From IMG/VR virus record IMGVR_UViG_3300037502_002993, positions 156,599 through 220,598 of that record: a stretch of DNA of 64,000 nt. One strand, written 5' to 3'. A program made the translations under genes and the position numbers. The notes beneath the pieces were generated by a model. The model ran no database searches. It was given only the letters and a program-made list of their open reading frames with translations, and was not told the DNA's origin. Shown here piece by piece: positions 15,142 to 30,019 of this stretch (positions within the stretch are counted from its first letter, which is position 1; each line of letters opens with the position of its first letter).

Positions 15142-15963
15142 ATGAAAACACGCTATTTGAGGGGCACTCGTGCACAGTTAAATGCCCTAAATCTCCCTGA
15201 GGGGAATTTAGCTATTGATGTAGAAACCAAGGCTTTACGGTTCTTTGATGGAGAAACCCAAGGCGGCTTTGAGGTCCTGGGAACACGGGCCTATGAGCCC
15301 TCACCTCCTGGACCCACTGAGTTAATTGCGGGTGATTTAACCACTGGTTTTTATGGCGAGGTGGGGCCTGAGGAGTTCATCACCTACGGTGCCCTGAGTA
15401 CCTTGGTTGGGTTGAGTGCGGGGACCCTCCAGCATGATGCTGAATCCCTCTGGCTGAAGTTCTCCCTCGATGGGTCCCCGCTGTACGTCATGAAGAAGCC
15501 TGCACGACACACGGTGTCGTGGGATCAGCTGCACGCAGCGGGCCTGGTCTTTGGGACCAACACGGTGGAGGTCCAAGGACTCACCTACCAGGTCCGCCTG
15601 CTGCGCGGTGCTGCCTCCGACCCCACCACCGATGACATCGGCTTCGACATCCCCACCAGTCATGGGTCGGAGTGGAACCGGTTACTGTACCCCATCCACA
15701 GTGGGGTCCACACCAACACCAATAACCCCACGGTGCACACTGACCCCACTGCTGCGCCTTTTGGGAGCTGGGCACAGTACAGTGACAGTGATTTGGTATT
15801 ACGTGATACCGACAATGGTCGCCTCACCTGGTGTCAAGAAACCGCCGCCACCAGCACCCAGCGCGTGTATCGTGGTAATCCTGGTGTTACGACCTTGTTT
15901 CGCAATACCTCTTCGACTACGCGTTCGGATGTCGGTTGGAGAGCAGTCCTCGTGCCGGTATAA
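15142..15963 (+). CDS. Mtd-like putative receptor-binding protein (Mtd N-terminal-like domain plus C-type-lectin-like C-terminus)
   Basis: N-terminus LRGTRAQ...LAIDVETKALRFFDGETQGGF resembles the Mtd N-terminal domain; C-terminus TWCQE...RVYRG...GWRAVL resembles a CLec/FGE-fold end. Confidence 0.65.
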   Translation: MKTRYLRGTRAQLNALNLPEGNLAIDVETKALRFFDGETQGGFEVLGTRAYEPSPPGPTELIAGDLTTGFYGEVGPEEFITYGALSTLVGLSAGTLQHDAESLWLKFSLDGSPLYVMKKPARHTVSWDQLHAAGLVFGTNTVEVQGLTYQVRLLRGAASDPTTDDIGFDIPTSHGSEWNRLLYPIHSGVHTNTNNPTVHTDPTAAPFGSWAQYSDSDLVLRDTDNGRLTWCQETAATSTQRVYRGNPGVTTLFRNTSSTTRSDVGWRAVLVPV

Positions 15964-24988: not shown

Positions 24989-25207
24989 TCACTCTTCTGA
25001 CTGGATTGCCTCGCTAAAACAGACGCCAGCTAAGGCTACACCCACCACCCCACTTACCCCTGTCAGGACATAACCTTTAATCGCTTCTGTGCGAGTGATG
25101 AGGCCAGCCTTTTGCATTTTGTGGATGCGCTTGGCAGCCATGCCGGACATACCAACCAAACCCAGGCTACCGATACCGGTTGCCGCATTCGTGATACGAT
25201 TCAACAT
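24989..25207 (-). CDS. Small two-helix membrane protein, paralog A
   Basis: AGGAG SD; KMQKAGLITRTE between two hydrophobic segments. Confidence 0.7.
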   Translation of the reverse strand: MLNRITNAATGIGSLGLVGMSGMAAKRIHKMQKAGLITRTEAIKGYVLTGVSGVVGVALAGVCFSEAIQSEE

Positions 25208-25253: not shown

Positions 25254-25469
25254 TCAATCCCCGTTCACCATGTCCTTAATGGACACCACCACACCTGTCG
25301 CATTGGCCACGGTCAGTGAGCCAAAGGTGGCGTAGAGAAGGACCCCCTCCGTCCGACTGATCACGCCTGCTTTACGCAACTTGCGGGTGCGGCGTACACC
25401 GTCGACAGACAGTGCAGTGCAGACAGAACCGATGGTGATGCCGATGGCATTTCCGATGACGTTGTTCAT
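25254..25469 (-). CDS. Small two-helix membrane protein, paralog B
   Basis: GGAG SD; KLRKAGVISRTE between two hydrophobic segments. Confidence 0.7.
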   Translation of the reverse strand: MNNVIGNAIGITIGSVCTALSVDGVRRTRKLRKAGVISRTEGVLLYATFGSLTVANATGVVVSIKDMVNGD

Positions 25470-26212: not shown

Positions 26213-26611
26213 CTACCACTCCACCCAATTGGGGTTAGAATAACCCTCCTTACCGGTAGTGGGCTGACGAAGTCCCCGAACGTAGGTGTCTTTAATGTTC
26301 TTGGATTGCGTTTCCCACTTGAGGTTACTCTTGGCATTATTCAACCGATCGTCATCTTGATGACATCCTACCTCGCCCGCTTTAGGGGGACCATAGAACG
26401 CACGACAGACTAAATCATGCACATAGCAGAGTTTCCTTCCTTCCCCTACCTTCACACTCACACGACGATACTGCCCCGCAACTCCCCCCAATGTAATCTT
26501 CTCACTCTCCTTAAGAAACACCTCTCCCTTTTTATTGACCAGTACCTGGGGATAGCCCGGCACTGTGTAAAACCCTTTGGGCTTCTCTACCGCCTTGGGT
26601 GTGAAGGCCAT
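26213..26611 (-). CDS. Free-standing HNH endonuclease
   Basis: VHDLVCRAFYGP...CHQDDDRLNNAKSNLKWETQSKN. Confidence 0.85.
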   Translation of the reverse strand: MAFTPKAVEKPKGFYTVPGYPQVLVNKKGEVFLKESEKITLGGVAGQYRRVSVKVGEGRKLCYVHDLVCRAFYGPPKAGEVGCHQDDDRLNNAKSNLKWETQSKNIKDTYVRGLRQPTTGKEGYSNPNWVEW

Positions 26612-26679
26612 GTCTCCCCCTTGTTCTTAACGGCAGAATGGCCGCCCCGGAGGGCGGCCATTCCATGGCACCACTCATC

Positions 26680-26967
26680 TTAGAGTTCCGAATACCGAGG
26701 AGTGCCGTCTTCCGTTGTTCGCATCTCCCCGTCTTCGGTTAACCGAAGCTCTACCACAGTCACCTCGGCTTCCAGTCCAGCCACCCGCAGCGTAACACTA
26801 CCAGGCGCCAGTGCAGTGACCACCCCACTGGAGTCGACAATGGCGGTACCATCATCAGGTTCCAACATCCAAGTAACATCACTCGGAGTGTTTCCCACCT
26901 CATCGGTAAGGGAGAACGCTTGGCTCTCCCCAACGGTCAATGTTACTGCTGTGGGCTCTAAGGTGAG
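26680..26967 (-). CDS. Ig-like (Big_2) domain in frame with the major capsid protein, directly after its TAA
   Basis: LTLEPTAVTLTVGESQAF...VTW...AIVDSSGVVTALAPGSVTLRV; no SD before the TTG at 26940. Confidence 0.75.
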   Translation of the reverse strand, partial: LTLEPTAVTLTVGESQAFSLTDEVGNTPSDVTWMLEPDDGTAIVDSSGVVTALAPGSVTLRVAGLEAEVTVVELRLTEDGEMRTTEDGTPRYSEL

Positions 26968-29229
26968 TTAACCCGCAGGCGGCTCTTCTACCGGCTCTTC
27001 CGGAGTGGTCGGAGCTGCGCTGCCACCGCCGATACGGGCGTTGAACTGCGACAGGCTCATGACCTCTTCCAGACCTTCCACGTCGATCTCCAGCGCGAAC
27101 GGGATGTTGTTGACGTGCAGGTTGAAGGGCACGGCGGCGATCTCACGAGAGATCTGACCATGACGAGAGATCGGCAGGTCGGCCACGATGGTCGGCACGT
27201 AGTAGAAGGTACCCCAGTTCAGGATATCGTTCTCCACGGGCTTCTCACGGGTCAGGATGACCACGATCTTACCGTCCATCCGCTCGTTGTTGGTGGCAAC
27301 GATGTCGTACTTCAGGTAGGCACCGAGGGCACGGTCGTCACCAGAGTGCATCAGGTAGTTGGCGATATCAGAAGAGGTCAGGATGACCGCCTTCGGACGC
27401 TCGTCAGCATTGCCGGTGATGGTCTGGAACGCCGCCTGGATGTTCGAGTCGCGATAAGCGGTGAACATCATGGAGCGGATCACGTTCAGGATGGACTCAC
27501 AGACATCCTTGAAGCGGTCTTGGCTCTTGATGGAGTCGACTGCATCACGCAGATCCAGAGACGCATGACGGTAGGTCGGACGCATCACGGCGGACAGAGC
27601 CCCTTCCACCTGACCGAACTTCGGACGGGTGAAACCAGCACCTACGTACTCACGCAGCTGGGCACAGTAGTTCAGCAGGCGAGTCACGGCGTTGGCGGAG
27701 TTGCGCACGTTGGTGGCGGCGGTCAGGAACTTGACCACATCGCCCGGACCGGCTTCGTCCATGGTGGACATCGGCAGGGTGATCGGCGCATGCATCGGGA
27801 TCGGGTAGCGGAACTGCAGGGCACGGGTCTGCAGCAGCTGACCGCGGTTACGACGGTTGGTGTTGGTGAAACGGGCGTCGAGCTCGTAGCCCACCACAGC
27901 CATGTCACCGAGGGCAGTGATCATAGCGGCAACCGCACCGCCGGTCAGGGCCAGAGAGGTACCTTCCTCGTCGTACACGCGGCTGACTTCCACCGGGCTC
28001 GGGGAGAGGTACAGGCTGCCCTTGGACAGGGACACAGTACCGGACATCTGCACGGACACACGAACGCTCCAACCAGCCGGAACGTTTGCCAGGGCAGTGC
28101 CTTCCACGGTGGTGGTGTCGGCAGTGATCAGCAGGTCGTCTGACATGAACGCCAGGTTGGCGTTACGGGTATCAGACTGCAGGGCCGGTTGGAAGACAGC
28201 GGTCGGCATACGGCGCACGTTGAAGCGCACCACGCCATCGCCAGTCTGCACATACAGGCTCTTCAGCCACATGGCGCTGTCCAGGGTATCGGAGATATCC
28301 AGGTAGTGGCCATTCAGCAGCTGCTGCTGGTTGGAGATACCGATCAGGTTCAGCTTGGTGTTCGGACGCAGCGGAGCAGTGCGCACCGGGCCGGTGTTGG
28401 GGTGCTCGACTTCGATCGGCGCGACCAGGCCTGCCGGGATGAAGTACTGGGTGTTGTCATCCTGCTCGTTGACCACCGGGATACAGGCAGTGCTGAAGTC
28501 TTCCAGAATGGACGGATCACGGAAGGCTTCGACCAGGTTGACTTCCTGGGTGTCGAACAGCGCGCCAGTGGTCTGGTGATAGACATCACGCATCACGGCG
28601 ACGTAGGTCAGGTTCTGGGTCACACCACCTTCGGTCGGGTTCACGACCACGGTCGGGTAGGCGGCTTCACCGAAGGCATCCTGACGGGCGGCGGTCAGGC
28701 TGTAGCCGACAGAGACCACACGGAAGTCACGCTGGGACTTCTCGTTGTAGTTCTCCATGGCGGCTTTGGCATCGGAAACGGTCATCAGAGAACCAGCCGG
28801 GCCATCCAGCATCGGACGCACGTTGATCACGTTCGGATCAGCGGATTCCACAGCCACGGCCATCTTGGCCATGTTGTTGCGCCACTGGCGGGCGTTGGTC
28901 AGCGCCGCTTGGGTCAGCAGGGCGGCAGTGATCTGGTTGGAGGCCACGCGATCGGCATCAGCACCACGACCCTGGTTGTAGTGCTCAAAGCCCACGCTCG
29001 GATCACCGAGGATGTCTTCCAGCGCACGGTACATACCCTGGATCTCTTCACCCAGGTGACCATCGACGTCGCCGAAACCTTCCAGGGCGGCGGAGAAGTG
29101 CTCAGCGCCAACGCTCAGTTGACCGGCTTGGGTGCCGTCGATCTGCTCGTAGGACTTGGCGAAGGCGCTCAGGTTAAAGTGGGCAGACGTGCGATCCCGC
29201 TTGCCCATCAGGAAGTTCTTGATGCTCAT
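26968..29229 (-). CDS. Major capsid protein (phiKZ gp120-like)
   Basis: 753 aa, strong codon bias, ARQDAFGEAAYPTVVV, PFNLHVNNIPFAL; N-terminal ALE/AVE/AME candidate protease sites. Confidence 0.9.
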   Translation of the reverse strand: MSIKNFLMGKRDRTSAHFNLSAFAKSYEQIDGTQAGQLSVGAEHFSAALEGFGDVDGHLGEEIQGMYRALEDILGDPSVGFEHYNQGRGADADRVASNQITAALLTQAALTNARQWRNNMAKMAVAVESADPNVINVRPMLDGPAGSLMTVSDAKAAMENYNEKSQRDFRVVSVGYSLTAARQDAFGEAAYPTVVVNPTEGGVTQNLTYVAVMRDVYHQTTGALFDTQEVNLVEAFRDPSILEDFSTACIPVVNEQDDNTQYFIPAGLVAPIEVEHPNTGPVRTAPLRPNTKLNLIGISNQQQLLNGHYLDISDTLDSAMWLKSLYVQTGDGVVRFNVRRMPTAVFQPALQSDTRNANLAFMSDDLLITADTTTVEGTALANVPAGWSVRVSVQMSGTVSLSKGSLYLSPSPVEVSRVYDEEGTSLALTGGAVAAMITALGDMAVVGYELDARFTNTNRRNRGQLLQTRALQFRYPIPMHAPITLPMSTMDEAGPGDVVKFLTAATNVRNSANAVTRLLNYCAQLREYVGAGFTRPKFGQVEGALSAVMRPTYRHASLDLRDAVDSIKSQDRFKDVCESILNVIRSMMFTAYRDSNIQAAFQTITGNADERPKAVILTSSDIANYLMHSGDDRALGAYLKYDIVATNNERMDGKIVVILTREKPVENDILNWGTFYYVPTIVADLPISRHGQISREIAAVPFNLHVNNIPFALEIDVEGLEEVMSLSQFNARIGGGSAAPTTPEEPVEEPPAG

Positions 29230-29331
29230 GTGGTATACCTTTTGCAAAAGGATTGGTATGTTGAAGAAACGTTTGAGTTTGCTTACCGTTCTCTGTAATC
29301 ACCACCTTTATGTCAGTATCAAGGAATGACC

Positions 29332-29871
29332 TCAATCCAACGGCAGGGATTTCAGATAATAGGAAAACAAATTGGTCTTGCTCATTCGTTCAAAGGAGAA
29401 CGTGTGCAGGACCTGAGCGATCATCGCATCGAAGAACGCTCGATTGTACGAGAGCTGCATGCTGTCAGGATCGCCTTCTTCATGGCGTGACCTCTGCCAC
29501 ACCACGACCCAGAACGTCTCGTCTACCACATCCAGGGAGTATACAGGAATGGTTACCGCATCTCCCATTTGGAAATCTGTTTCATACCGTAGTTGCAGGG
29601 TTTCTACCCGCTGTTGAACACGATCCTTAAGCGGCTCGTCATCCAGCAGTTGTTTCAGTGGTGAGGGCACCAACTGAATGTCCAGTTCTCGATCAAACGA
29701 GAAGGGGAAGTAACGCATCCCGAGTTCAATATCCGCTAGATCATCCGCACTGAGGACCTTGGTCATGCGGTTGATGGAGCGGAGTTCTTGGAGTGACACC
29801 CCTTCGTCTTTAAGACTTCGGTAGGTGTCATCAGAAATCACCAAGACCTGTGGCATGGCCAAGACTCCCAT
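29332..29871 (-). CDS. Virion protein upstream of capsid (gp119 position); start uncertain
   Basis: ORF between DnaB and capsid genes; synteny only. Confidence 0.6.
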   Translation of the reverse strand: MGVLAMPQVLVISDDTYRSLKDEGVSLQELRSINRMTKVLSADDLADIELGMRYFPFSFDRELDIQLVPSPLKQLLDDEPLKDRVQQRVETLQLRYETDFQMGDAVTIPVYSLDVVDETFWVVVWQRSRHEEGDPDSMQLSYNRAFFDAMIAQVLHTFSFERMSKTNLFSYYLKSLPLD

Positions 29872-30019
29872 CGGGGCACCTGCCCCAGTGCATGAAAAAC
29901 AACAGTTGTCATCATACAGTAAGGATTTCACCCATGGTAGTTTCCTGCGCTTTGGATAAAATACGCTCTGCTGTGATAGTCTGCTAAAGGGGTCCGTCTA
30001 TTGCATAAGGAGAGTCCAC

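What the first reader, a model, noticed from the sequence alone, without database searches (positions are those of the whole stretch)
26680..26990. Major capsid protein appears to be extended by an Ig domain through in-frame TAA readthrough
Seen: ...CCT GCG GGT TAA CTC ACC TTA GAG CCC ACA GCA GTA ACA TTG ACC GTT GGG... The capsid ends in a flexible linker (GGGSAAPTTPEEPVEEPPAG), and the first strand of a Big_2 domain (LTLEPTAVTLTVGE) starts at the codon after the stop in the same frame, nine codons before the TTG start, which has no SD. Known: phages often add Ig domains to capsid or tail proteins by frameshifting; UAA is normally the tightest stop. Inference: a minority of capsid subunits carry ~96 extra residues by readthrough, hopping or a suppressor tRNA. 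A recent nonsense mutation is the alternative.
Basis: partly seen in the sequence, partly recalled or inferred. Interest (0 to 1): 0.75.

Follow-up and report, generated by a model that had tools for sequence, protein, structure and literature searches.

The report
Read-through Ig tail on capsid protein
In this giant phiKZ-like phage the capsid gene's stop codon is followed, in the same reading frame, by an antibody-like domain that relatives almost certainly add to a few capsid subunits by reading through a leaky UGA stop; here the stop is the tight UAA, so the trick is probably weakened or newly lost.

Summary
A phiKZ-type major capsid protein (MCP) ends in a 20-residue linker and TAA (26970..26968). 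A Big_2 Ig domain starts at the very next codon, in frame. The 95 codons end in a 'LEDGxxR' double motif, a second TAA and a terminator.

Relatives show what this is. No relative has a sense codon at the stop (111 MCP homologues, none fused). The sister lineage (L081) has the same linker, a stop, a gapless 95-codon Ig extension and the motif. Its stop is TGA, and the window's TTG is ATT there.

Of 22 distinct phiKZ-like lineages with an in-frame post-stop extension, 21 use TGA, including phiKZ, PhiPA3 and 201phi2-1. Most extensions have no usable start codon and they evolve like coding sequence. Lineages that lost the extension (at least six independent losses) almost all end in TAA.

So the module is a conserved stop-codon read-through extension of the capsid protein. 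I found no paper describing it. This window is the only case with UAA. Its extension shows no decay, so it is either made at trace level or was silenced recently.

No protein-level data exist.

The parts
26971..29229 (-). Major capsid protein, phiKZ gp120 family. 753 aa from the ATG the gene caller uses; an upstream TTG at 29247 would give 759 aa.
   Evidence: Pfam PF25620 at E=8e-204. Homologues are 60-90% identical in the C-terminal region. 78.5% identical overall to the sister lineage L081.
26971..27030 (-). 20-residue low-complexity linker (GGGSAAPTTPEEPVEEPPAG) at the MCP C-terminus.
   Evidence: Lies beyond the end of the match to named phiKZ-like MCPs; in phiKZ-type fnug and Noxifer the MCP ends 3-5 residues after the match. 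Many MCPs in the window's own clade carry similar D/G/T/P/E-rich tails.
26968..26970 (-). MCP stop codon TAA, in the context GGT TAA C. The homologous codon is TGA in the sister lineage (GGT TGA C).
26752..26967 (-). Big_2 Ig-like domain: extension residues 1-72, in frame with the MCP.
   Evidence: PF02368 at 30.1 bits. AF2 pLDDT about 95. Foldseek finds Big_2 domains, including phi29 gp8, Douge gp8 and the lambda gpV C-terminal domain. 55% identical and gapless to the L081 extension, with dN/dS about 0.27.
26938..26940 (-). TTG at codon 10 of the extension. It is the only nearby possible start and has no Shine-Dalgarno sequence.
   Evidence: It is ATT in L081. A product starting here would lack strands 2-4 and most of 7-11.
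26683..26751 (-). C-terminal tail carrying the conserved double motif (LRLTEDGEMRTTEDGTPRYSEL).
   Evidence: The same R-x-L-E-D-G-x-x-R pattern, twice, as in the 24-30-codon post-stop extensions of phiKZ, PhiPA3, 201phi2-1, Phabio, Noxifer, Psa21 and metagenomic relatives. AF2 confidence is low in isolation.
26680..26682 (-). Second stop codon (TAA), which ends the extension.
26635..26664 (-). Terminator-type hairpin: 13-bp stem with a UCCG loop, 15 nt after the second stop.
   Evidence: z = -2.8. Relatives have an equivalent hairpin after the extension or, where the extension is absent, directly after the MCP stop. The MCP and its extension therefore lie on one transcript end.

Best explanation
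The 95 codons after the MCP stop are neither a separate gene nor a broken fusion. They are this phage's version of an in-frame, post-stop C-terminal extension that is conserved across phiKZ-like jumbo phages. Ribosomes can reach it only by reading through the MCP stop codon.

In relatives the stop is UGA, the leakiest bacterial stop. Most ribosomes terminate there and make normal MCP. A small fraction would insert an amino acid and add one of three tails:
- a peptide of about 26 residues with two LEDGxxR repeats (phiKZ, PhiPA3, 201phi2-1 and others);
- linker, Big_2 and that peptide (this window and its sister L081);
- linker, Big_2 and a second domain (L010, L083, L085).

By analogy with the phiKZ capsid, the MCP C-terminal arm sits at the capsomer centre, so the tail would be displayed there, like a built-in sub-stoichiometric Hoc.

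In this genome a single G-to-A change has turned UGA into UAA. The extended subunit should therefore be made far more rarely than in relatives, perhaps about one per capsid or fewer. That means the extension is either tuned down or has just been silenced, the first step of a loss that happened repeatedly in this clade.

Shown here: the anatomy, the homology, the coding-type conservation, and the co-variation of stop type with presence of the extension. Inferred: read-through itself, its rate, and the display site.
For: 1) The sister lineage L081/L082 has the same layout: MCP, acidic linker, TGA CTC ACG CTA GAG..., a gapless 95-codon Big_2 extension, the motif, a hairpin and an HNH gene. The first five post-stop codons encode LTLEP in both genomes and differ by three synonymous changes.

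2) In a scripted tally of 40 distinct MCP gene ends, 20 have TGA plus an extension, 1 has TAA plus an extension (the window), and 19 have TAA with no extension. Noxifer also has TGA plus an extension.

3) A tree of the MCP ends needs at least 6 independent changes to the 'TAA, no extension' state, nested among TGA lineages. L079 and L036/L070 keep 3' remnants of a deleted extension behind a TAA.

4) Six short extensions have no ATG, GTG or TTG at all. In the others the first start falls anywhere from codon 3 to codon 31 and is not conserved. L085 has CTG where L010 has ATG.

5) The extensions carry a coding signature. For the short ones, third-position entropy is 1.16 against 0.82 and 0.80 at positions 1 and 2, and pN/pS is 0.54 in frame against 0.88 and 1.13 out of frame. 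dN/dS is 0.19 for window vs L081 (the MCP itself gives 0.195) and 0.23 for L010 vs L085.

6) The Big_2 profile and the AF2 fold both start at codon 1-2 after the stop.

7) TGA is a minority stop in these genomes: 11 of 58 genes in phiKZ and 18 of 52 ORFs in the window. The base after an extension-bearing TGA is A in 16, G in 3, C in 1, and never T.

8) No MCP homologue is a continuous fusion.

9) In phiKZ the MCP C-terminal arm (residues 728-747) forms the central six-helix bundle of each hexamer and touches the outer protein gp244 at pentons (PMC11297242).
Against: There is no protein-level evidence for any member: no mass spectrometry, Ribo-seq or gel band. Published phiKZ capsid models end at residue 747.

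The window's extension shows no sign of decay. The ORF is intact and aligns without gaps. It has only 4 window-specific amino-acid changes against 17 in the TGA-bearing sister. Silencing, if real, must therefore be very recent. Otherwise the UAA is still read through often enough to be selected.

I found no conserved RNA structure that could stimulate read-through.

TGA also occurs without an extension in three lineages (L091, L093, RP12), so TGA alone is not diagnostic.

Only 64 kb of the 220.6-kb contig could be scanned for tRNAs. The TAA rests on one metagenome assembly.
Confidence: 0.55

Rival explanations
1. One reading: the UAA is itself read through (or hopped, or suppressed) at a biologically useful level. 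A minority of capsid subunits in this phage would still carry the Ig tail, and the extension would remain under selection.
For: The 95-codon ORF is intact and aligns without gaps to the sister. dN/dS is about 0.19-0.27. The window has fewer lineage-specific changes than the TGA-bearing sister, 4 against 17. The codons flanking the stop (GGT before, C after) are the same as in the sister. If the capsid is T=27 like phiKZ, with roughly 1,600 MCP copies (my arithmetic from T=27 as given in PMC13250141), even 0.1% read-through gives more than one Ig per capsid.
Against: All 21 other extension-bearing lineages keep TGA although TAA is one transition away. That implies TAA is normally selected against. 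TAA is the commonest ordinary stop in the window, 30 of 52, so general ochre suppression is unlikely. The only tRNA in the window is tRNA-His. There is no matching landing codon for a hop near the stop. From general knowledge, UAA is the tightest bacterial stop because both release factors read it.
Confidence: 0.25
2. The TAA is not the true or dominant sequence. It would be an assembly or base-call error, or a minority variant, and the phage population carries TGA like its sister.
For: A single contig and a single protein cluster member support it. The difference from the family state is one G-to-A change. The extension is undecayed.
Against: Consensus errors at a single base are rare in deep short-read assemblies. 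Nothing else in the region looks misassembled. I could not check reads.
Confidence: 0.08
3. The Ig ORF is translated on its own from TTG 26940, for example by ribosomes that re-initiate 27 nt after terminating at TAA. This would give a free 86-residue decoration protein that binds capsids through its C-terminal motif.
For: A TTG exists 9 codons after the stop, and the gene caller reports an 86-aa product. In L010 and L083 an ATG lies 2 codons after the stop, so coupling is conceivable there.
Against: There is no Shine-Dalgarno sequence. The TTG is ATT in the sister, and L085 has CTG where L010 has ATG. The product would lack the first strands of the Ig fold. The six short extensions without any start cannot be made this way.
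Confidence: 0.07
4. The post-stop sequences of the whole family are not translated at all. Their conservation would reflect an RNA or DNA element in the 3' UTR of the MCP mRNA.
For: No protein evidence exists. The region lies between the stop and the terminator.
Against: Third-codon-position variation and synonymous switches between Arg and Leu codon families keep the peptide constant. RNAalifold finds almost no conserved structure: -6 kcal/mol, with 2 covarying pairs. Whole protein domains are inserted in frame at this point in three lineages.
Confidence: 0.03
5. A recent nonsense mutation broke a formerly continuous MCP-Ig fusion gene.
For: The domain abuts the stop, in frame.
Against: None of 111 homologues is longer than 774 aa or carries Big_2. 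Every relative with the Ig domain has a stop at the same place.
Confidence: 0.01

Closest known systems
Qbeta (Allolevivirus) A1 read-through protein
   Same: The coat gene ends in a leaky UGA. An in-frame extension with no start of its own is added to a few per cent of coat subunits, which are built into the capsid. Background on Qbeta is from my own knowledge.
   Different: Qbeta is an ssRNA phage with an unrelated 196-residue extension. Here the phage is a dsDNA jumbo phage, and the extension is a short repeat peptide and/or a Big_2 domain. In this window the stop is UAA. Read-through is experimentally proven for Qbeta and is only inferred here.
Frameshift-made minor capsid proteins with Ig-like tails (T3 gp10B, Lactobacillus phage A2, Listeria phages A118, A500 and PSA; T7 10B has a non-Ig tail)
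   Same: Recoding at the 3' end of the MCP gene gives a minor, C-terminally extended capsid subunit, often with an Ig-like domain (review PMC5009743).
   Different: Those cases use -1 or +1 frameshifting into another frame. Here the extension is in frame 0 behind a stop codon. In what I read of that review, such Ig-like extensions are described as made by frameshifting or by ordinary in-frame decoding; none by read-through.
Constitutive C-terminal Big_2 domains on capsid or tail proteins (phi29 gp8, mycobacteriophage Douge gp8, lambda gpV, T5 pb6)
   Same: The same fold, in the same position at the C-terminus of a major structural protein (Foldseek).
   Different: Those domains are fused by sense codons and sit on every subunit. 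Here the domain is behind a stop, so at most a small fraction of subunits could carry it.
T4 Hoc
   Same: An Ig-like decoration at the centre of hexameric capsomers. Here that site is inferred from the position of the phiKZ MCP C-terminal arm (PMC11297242).
   Different: Hoc is a separate gene product that binds after assembly. Here the domain would be covalently part of the MCP.

Membership tests
Programmed stop-codon read-through (recoding) | An in-frame ORF directly after the stop, with no conserved start codon or ribosome-binding site of its own | tested here: met
   Window: the first start is TTG at codon 10, with no SD. Relatives: no start at all in 6 extensions, otherwise a start at codons 3-31 that is not conserved.
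Programmed stop-codon read-through (recoding) | The stop codon and the downstream coding signature are conserved across diverged relatives | tested here: met
   22 distinct lineages have a stop followed by an in-frame extension. In-frame pN/pS is 0.54 against about 1 out of frame. dN/dS is about 0.2 for the Ig extensions.
Programmed stop-codon read-through (recoding) | A leaky stop (UGA or UAG in a weak context) | tested here: not met
   The window has UAA. The 21 other extension-bearing lineages have UGA followed by A, G or C, never U. The feature is met for the family but not for this genome.
Programmed stop-codon read-through (recoding) | A stimulatory downstream RNA structure (present in some known cases, not all) | tested here: inconclusive
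   No significant local fold in the window (z = -0.8). No conserved structure in the 15 short extensions.
Programmed stop-codon read-through (recoding) | The extended protein product is detected | not testable with these tools
   This needs MS, western blot or Ribo-seq. The papers I searched and read do not report it.
Big_2 (PF02368) bacterial Ig-like domain | Profile match above the gathering score, plus an Ig beta-sandwich fold | tested here: met
   30.1 bits against a cut-off of 22.8. AF2 pLDDT about 95 for residues 1-72. Foldseek hits to Big_2 structures at E = 3e-5.
PhiKZ_MCP (PF25620), major capsid protein of phiKZ-like (Chimalliviridae-type) phages | A full-length profile match and conserved synteny with the gp119 homologue and the helicase | tested here: met
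   E = 8e-204 over profile positions 2-634 of 635. Relatives show the order divDNAB, gp119, MCP. I did not run the window's own upstream ORF 29332..29931(-) against Pfam.
Ochre-suppressor-dependent decoding | A tRNA with anticodon UUA encoded by the phage | tested here: inconclusive
   The window holds only tRNA-His(GUG). The other 156 kb of the contig could not be read within the look-up caps.

The most novel reading that the evidence does not exclude
phiKZ-like jumbo phages, including the model phages phiKZ, PhiPA3 and 201phi2-1, conserve a programmed UGA read-through at the end of the major capsid gene. It would make a minor capsid isoform carrying a LEDGxxR-repeat peptide and, in some lineages, Ig-like domains. 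I found no paper describing such recoding for a capsid of a dsDNA phage. The window would be a natural UAA variant of this system, caught between full function and loss.
Probability: 0.7. Interest if true: 0.8.

Novelty: new variant of a known kind. Interest (0 to 1): 0.72.

Why it matters
Minor capsid isoforms made by recoding are known from frameshifting in dsDNA phages such as T3, T7, A2 and PSA. They are known from UGA read-through in the ssRNA phage Qbeta. A conserved read-through extension on the capsid protein of the phiKZ group would add a hidden virion component to one of the most intensively studied phage families (phage nucleus, capsid trafficking, therapy candidates).

It would explain why the most highly expressed late gene keeps the 'weak' stop TGA in genomes that mostly use TAA. 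It would also give a natural series for study: short peptide, Ig domain, two domains, repeated losses, and this UAA intermediate. That series could show how phages tune the dose of surface-displayed domains.

The idea is directly testable with existing phiKZ proteomics and Ribo-seq data. The same motif closes phiKZ gp143, a proposed lysis regulator, which hints that the peptide is an interaction tag.

Tried and rejected
- tblastn of the Ig ORF against 50,697 phage records found nothing.
- The word-indexed protein search with the 95-aa ORF found only the window's own 86-aa call. Extensions without starts are never called as genes, so protein databases miss them.
- L005, a 40% Big_2 hit, is an unrelated secreted multi-domain protein of another phage type.
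- The consensus promoter/terminator scan missed the real hairpin because its T-run is short. Folding the strand showed it.
- I searched for a read-through-stimulating RNA structure and found nothing convincing.
- Pfam finds no family for the 26-residue motif.
- A regex scan for the motif elsewhere in the window found no second copy.
- Selenocysteine or a recoded genetic code are rejected. There is no conserved hairpin after the UGA, and TGA and TAA both serve as ordinary stops in the window and in phiKZ.
- A -1 slip or a hop at G GGT TAA is rejected. The -1 frame does not encode the domain, and the nearest in-frame GGN landing codon is 14 codons downstream.
- I planned to walk the remaining 156 kb of the contig to scan for tRNAs, then dropped it. 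Each look-up adds only about 10 kb, and the caps (12 look-ups, 8 scans) could not cover the distance.
- Four literature searches for read-through in phiKZ, Chimalliviridae or jumbo phages, or for read-through-added Ig-like capsid domains, gave no relevant paper.
Full report
**1. The observation**

The finding lies on the minus strand. The ORF 26968..29247(-) is a phiKZ-type major capsid protein (MCP). It matches Pfam PF25620 at E=8e-204, and the gene caller's product is 753 aa (P0001).

The MCP ends ...NARIGGGSAAPTTPEEPVEEPPAG, followed by TAA at 26970..26968. The same frame then runs open for 95 codons to TAA at 26682..26680. The translation reads LTLEPTAVTLTVGESQAFSL...VTVVELRLTEDGEMRTTEDGTPRYSEL.

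Big_2 (PF02368) matches residues 2-61 to profile positions 6-65, above its gathering score. AlphaFold2 folds residues 1-72 into an Ig sandwich at pLDDT about 95. Strands 2-4 and 7-11 are encoded before the only nearby start, TTG at codon 10 (26940), which has no Shine-Dalgarno sequence.

Foldseek finds Big_2 domains, including the C-terminal domains of phi29 gp8, Douge gp8 and lambda gpV. A 13-bp hairpin follows the second stop.

**2. Where the window comes from**

The window is the last 64 kb of IMG/VR contig UViG_3300037502_002993, which is 220.6 kb long. No named phage is close to it. The best MCP C-terminal identity to a named phage is 65%.

The match to named phiKZ-like MCPs stops about 20 residues before the window's MCP end. 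In phiKZ-type fnug and Noxifer the MCP ends 3-5 residues after the match. The PE-rich linker is therefore an addition in this lineage.

**3.

The nearest MCP is P0002, 78.5% identical overall, on Logan contigs L081 and L082. There the MCP ends in an acidic linker (...GGDDDTGGDDNG) followed by TGA. Then come CTC ACG CTA GAG CCT..., encoding LTLEPASVSIAVGEEF... This is a 95-codon extension that aligns to the window's without a gap (55% identity). It ends RFLEDGSFRALENGLPRLLES and is followed by a hairpin and the same HNH gene.

- The position holds a stop in the relative, not a sense codon.
- The window's TTG is ATT there, and the first in-frame start in L081 is codon 31.
- The first five post-stop codons encode LTLEP in both genomes and differ by three synonymous changes.
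- None of 111 MCP homologues is longer than 774 aa or carries Big_2, so no continuous fusion exists.

**4. The same arrangement is family-wide, and it goes with TGA**

A second group has MCP, linker, TGA, and then Big_2 plus a second domain of about 130 residues, in frame. L010 and L083 have an ATG two codons after the stop. L085 has CTG at that place.

A large group has the MCP stop TGA followed in frame by 24-30 codons, then a second stop and the terminator. The peptide has the pattern R-x-L-E-D/N-G-x-x-R-Y-L-E-D-G-x-x-x-R-Y-L-E. This group includes phiKZ (fnug, PA7), PhiPA3, 201phi2-1, phiHQ, Phabio, Noxifer, Psa21 and many metagenomic contigs. The window's Ig extension ends with this same motif. 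Here, then, the Ig domain sits between the linker and the ancestral peptide.

Six of the short extensions contain no ATG, GTG or TTG. In the rest the first start is scattered between codons 9 and 21.

The short extensions evolve as coding sequence in the MCP frame:
- Entropy by codon position is 0.82, 0.80 and 1.16.
- pN/pS is 0.54 in frame, against 0.88 and 1.13 in the shifted frames.
- Arg and Leu codon families switch while the peptide is kept.

No conserved RNA structure explains this conservation.

**5. Stop type co-varies with the extension**

| State | Distinct MCP ends in the scripted tally |
|---|---|
| TGA + extension | 20 |
| TAA + extension | 1 (the window) |
| TAA, no extension | 19 |

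Fisher's exact test gives 3e-10, not corrected for phylogeny. Outside that tally, Noxifer has TGA plus an extension. L091, L093 and RP12 have TGA without one.

More distant phages of Erwinia, Salmonella, Klebsiella, Vibrio, Proteus and another Ralstonia phage (RsoM3USA) have TAA and no extension.

On an MCP tree the 'TAA, no extension' state needs at least six independent origins, nested among TGA lineages. For example, L007 and L012 sit inside the L010/L083 group, and L079 sits inside a short-extension clade. L079 and L036/L070 still carry the 3' remnant of a deleted extension behind a TAA.

TGA is a minority stop in these genomes: 11 of 58 genes in a 50-kb stretch of phiKZ, and 18 of 52 ORFs in the window. 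Extension-bearing TGAs are followed by A (16), G (3) or C (1, plus Noxifer), and never T. The last residue before the stop is always P, A or G.

The simplest reading is that the extension is made by read-through of a leaky UGA. Selection would keep UGA while the extension is useful. TAA would take over once the extension is lost.

**6. What this means for the window**

The window is the only extension-bearing lineage with UAA, one G-to-A transition from the family state. The flanking codons are unchanged from the sister (GGT before, CTC after).

Its extension shows no decay:
- The ORF is intact and aligns without gaps.
- dN/dS against L081 is about 0.19 (0.27 for the Ig part), the same as the MCP itself at 0.195.
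- With L010 and L085 as outgroups, the window has 4 lineage-specific amino-acid changes against 17 in L081.

TAA is the commonest ordinary stop in the window (30 of 52), and the window encodes only tRNA-His. General ochre suppression is therefore unlikely.

Two readings remain. The change may be very recent, a first step of the recurrent loss pathway, or even a minority variant or an error. Alternatively, trace read-through of UAA may still matter. A T=27 capsid like phiKZ's has roughly 1,600 MCP copies, so 0.1% read-through would give more than one Ig per particle. I cannot separate these two readings with sequence alone. I favour 'strongly reduced or just silenced' because all 21 other lineages have kept UGA.

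**7. Likely display site**

In the 3.5-A phiKZ capsid structure, the MCP C-terminal arm (residues 728-747, the last residue) forms a six-helix bundle at the centre of each hexamer. At pentons it contacts gp244, which sits on the outer surface (PMC11297242). A read-through tail would therefore emerge at the capsomer centre, the place Hoc occupies on T4. That it faces outward in hexamers is my inference. Sub-stoichiometric tails would be averaged out in icosahedral maps.

**8. Comparison with what is known**

The review PMC5009743 describes Ig-like C-terminal extensions of phage coat proteins made by -1 or +1 frameshifting (T3, A2, A118, A500, PSA). In what I read, the only alternative it gives for these extensions is ordinary in-frame decoding. 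UGA read-through of a coat gene is classical for Qbeta (my own knowledge).

Four full-text searches found no paper describing read-through for phiKZ, Chimalliviridae or jumbo phages, or read-through-added Ig-like capsid domains. I also read two phiKZ structure papers and a Tn-seq preprint, and none mentions it. I therefore rate this a new variant of a known kind, with the caveat that the library searched is incomplete.

**9. Limits**

No experiment supports translation of any extension. The read-through rate, the inserted amino acid and the function of the LEDGxxR peptide are unknown. The other 156 kb of the contig was not scanned for tRNAs. The TAA rests on one assembly.

Noticed in passing
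L089:46984-47517 (phiKZ-type phage fnug, gene fnug_172 = PHIKZ143): phiKZ gp143 (177 aa, phrog_2935 'virion structural protein') ends in ...IRLLENGAARYLENGQIRYLES*. This is the same double motif as the MCP post-stop extension. A 2026 paper (PMC12894885) proposes gp143 as a cytoplasmic lysis regulator that binds the holin gp142. The motif may be a shared C-terminal interaction tag.
   Followed up: partly
window 26213..26611 (-): An HNH_3 endonuclease ORF (PF13392, E=1.7e-6) lies directly after the terminator that closes the MCP extension. The same gene sits in the same place in the sister contigs L081 and L082. It looks like a homing-type endonuclease lodged next to the capsid gene.
   Followed up: partly
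L010:4469-5077, L083:4269-4877, L085:2580-3212: In these relatives the post-TGA extension is Big_2 plus a second domain of about 130 residues with no Pfam match. It lacks the LEDGxxR tail. dN/dS between L010 and L085 is 0.23.
   Followed up: partly
Relatives' MCP 3' ends (e.g. L003:3592-3730, L081:6563-6620); window 26620..26664 (-): Most of the terminator hairpins after the MCP gene in relatives are followed by a close variant of TTTATGCCGT. The window has CATTCTGCCGTT. This could be a combined terminator and late-promoter signal of these phages.
   Followed up: no
MCP C-termini of homologues P0003-P0111: Many MCPs of the window's clade end in long low-complexity D/G/T/P/E tails even where TAA and a terminator follow at once (L007, L015, L086, L087, L090, L092, L094). 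These may be linkers left behind after the displayed domain was lost, or short 'whiskers' in their own right.
   Followed up: partly
L079:2001-2600; L036:2927-3000 and L070: A TAA stop is followed by a short in-frame remnant that aligns to the 3' end of the short extension of close relatives. These are decayed or deleted extensions.
   Followed up: yes
L056 (Ralstonia phage RP12), L091, L093: These MCP genes end in TGA without the motif. RP12 has 15 unrelated in-frame codons after the stop. L091 has 5 codons and then TAA. L093 has TGA TAG in tandem. TGA alone therefore does not mark an extension.
   Followed up: yes
window 15658..15734 (-): A single tRNA-His(GUG) gene is the only tRNA in the 64-kb window.
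   Followed up: no
window 24989..25207 (-) and 25254..25469 (-): Two adjacent small ORFs (72 and 71 aa) have similar Gly-rich hydrophobic N-terminal halves and a shared central ...KAG(L/V)I(T/S)RTE... stretch. They look like tandem paralogues of a small membrane protein.
   Followed up: no
L094:4180-4270: By eye, a tRNA-like sequence lies shortly downstream of the MCP gene in a TARA contig. It appears to be tRNA-Leu with anticodon UAA, which is not a suppressor. I did not run it through ARAGORN.
   Followed up: no
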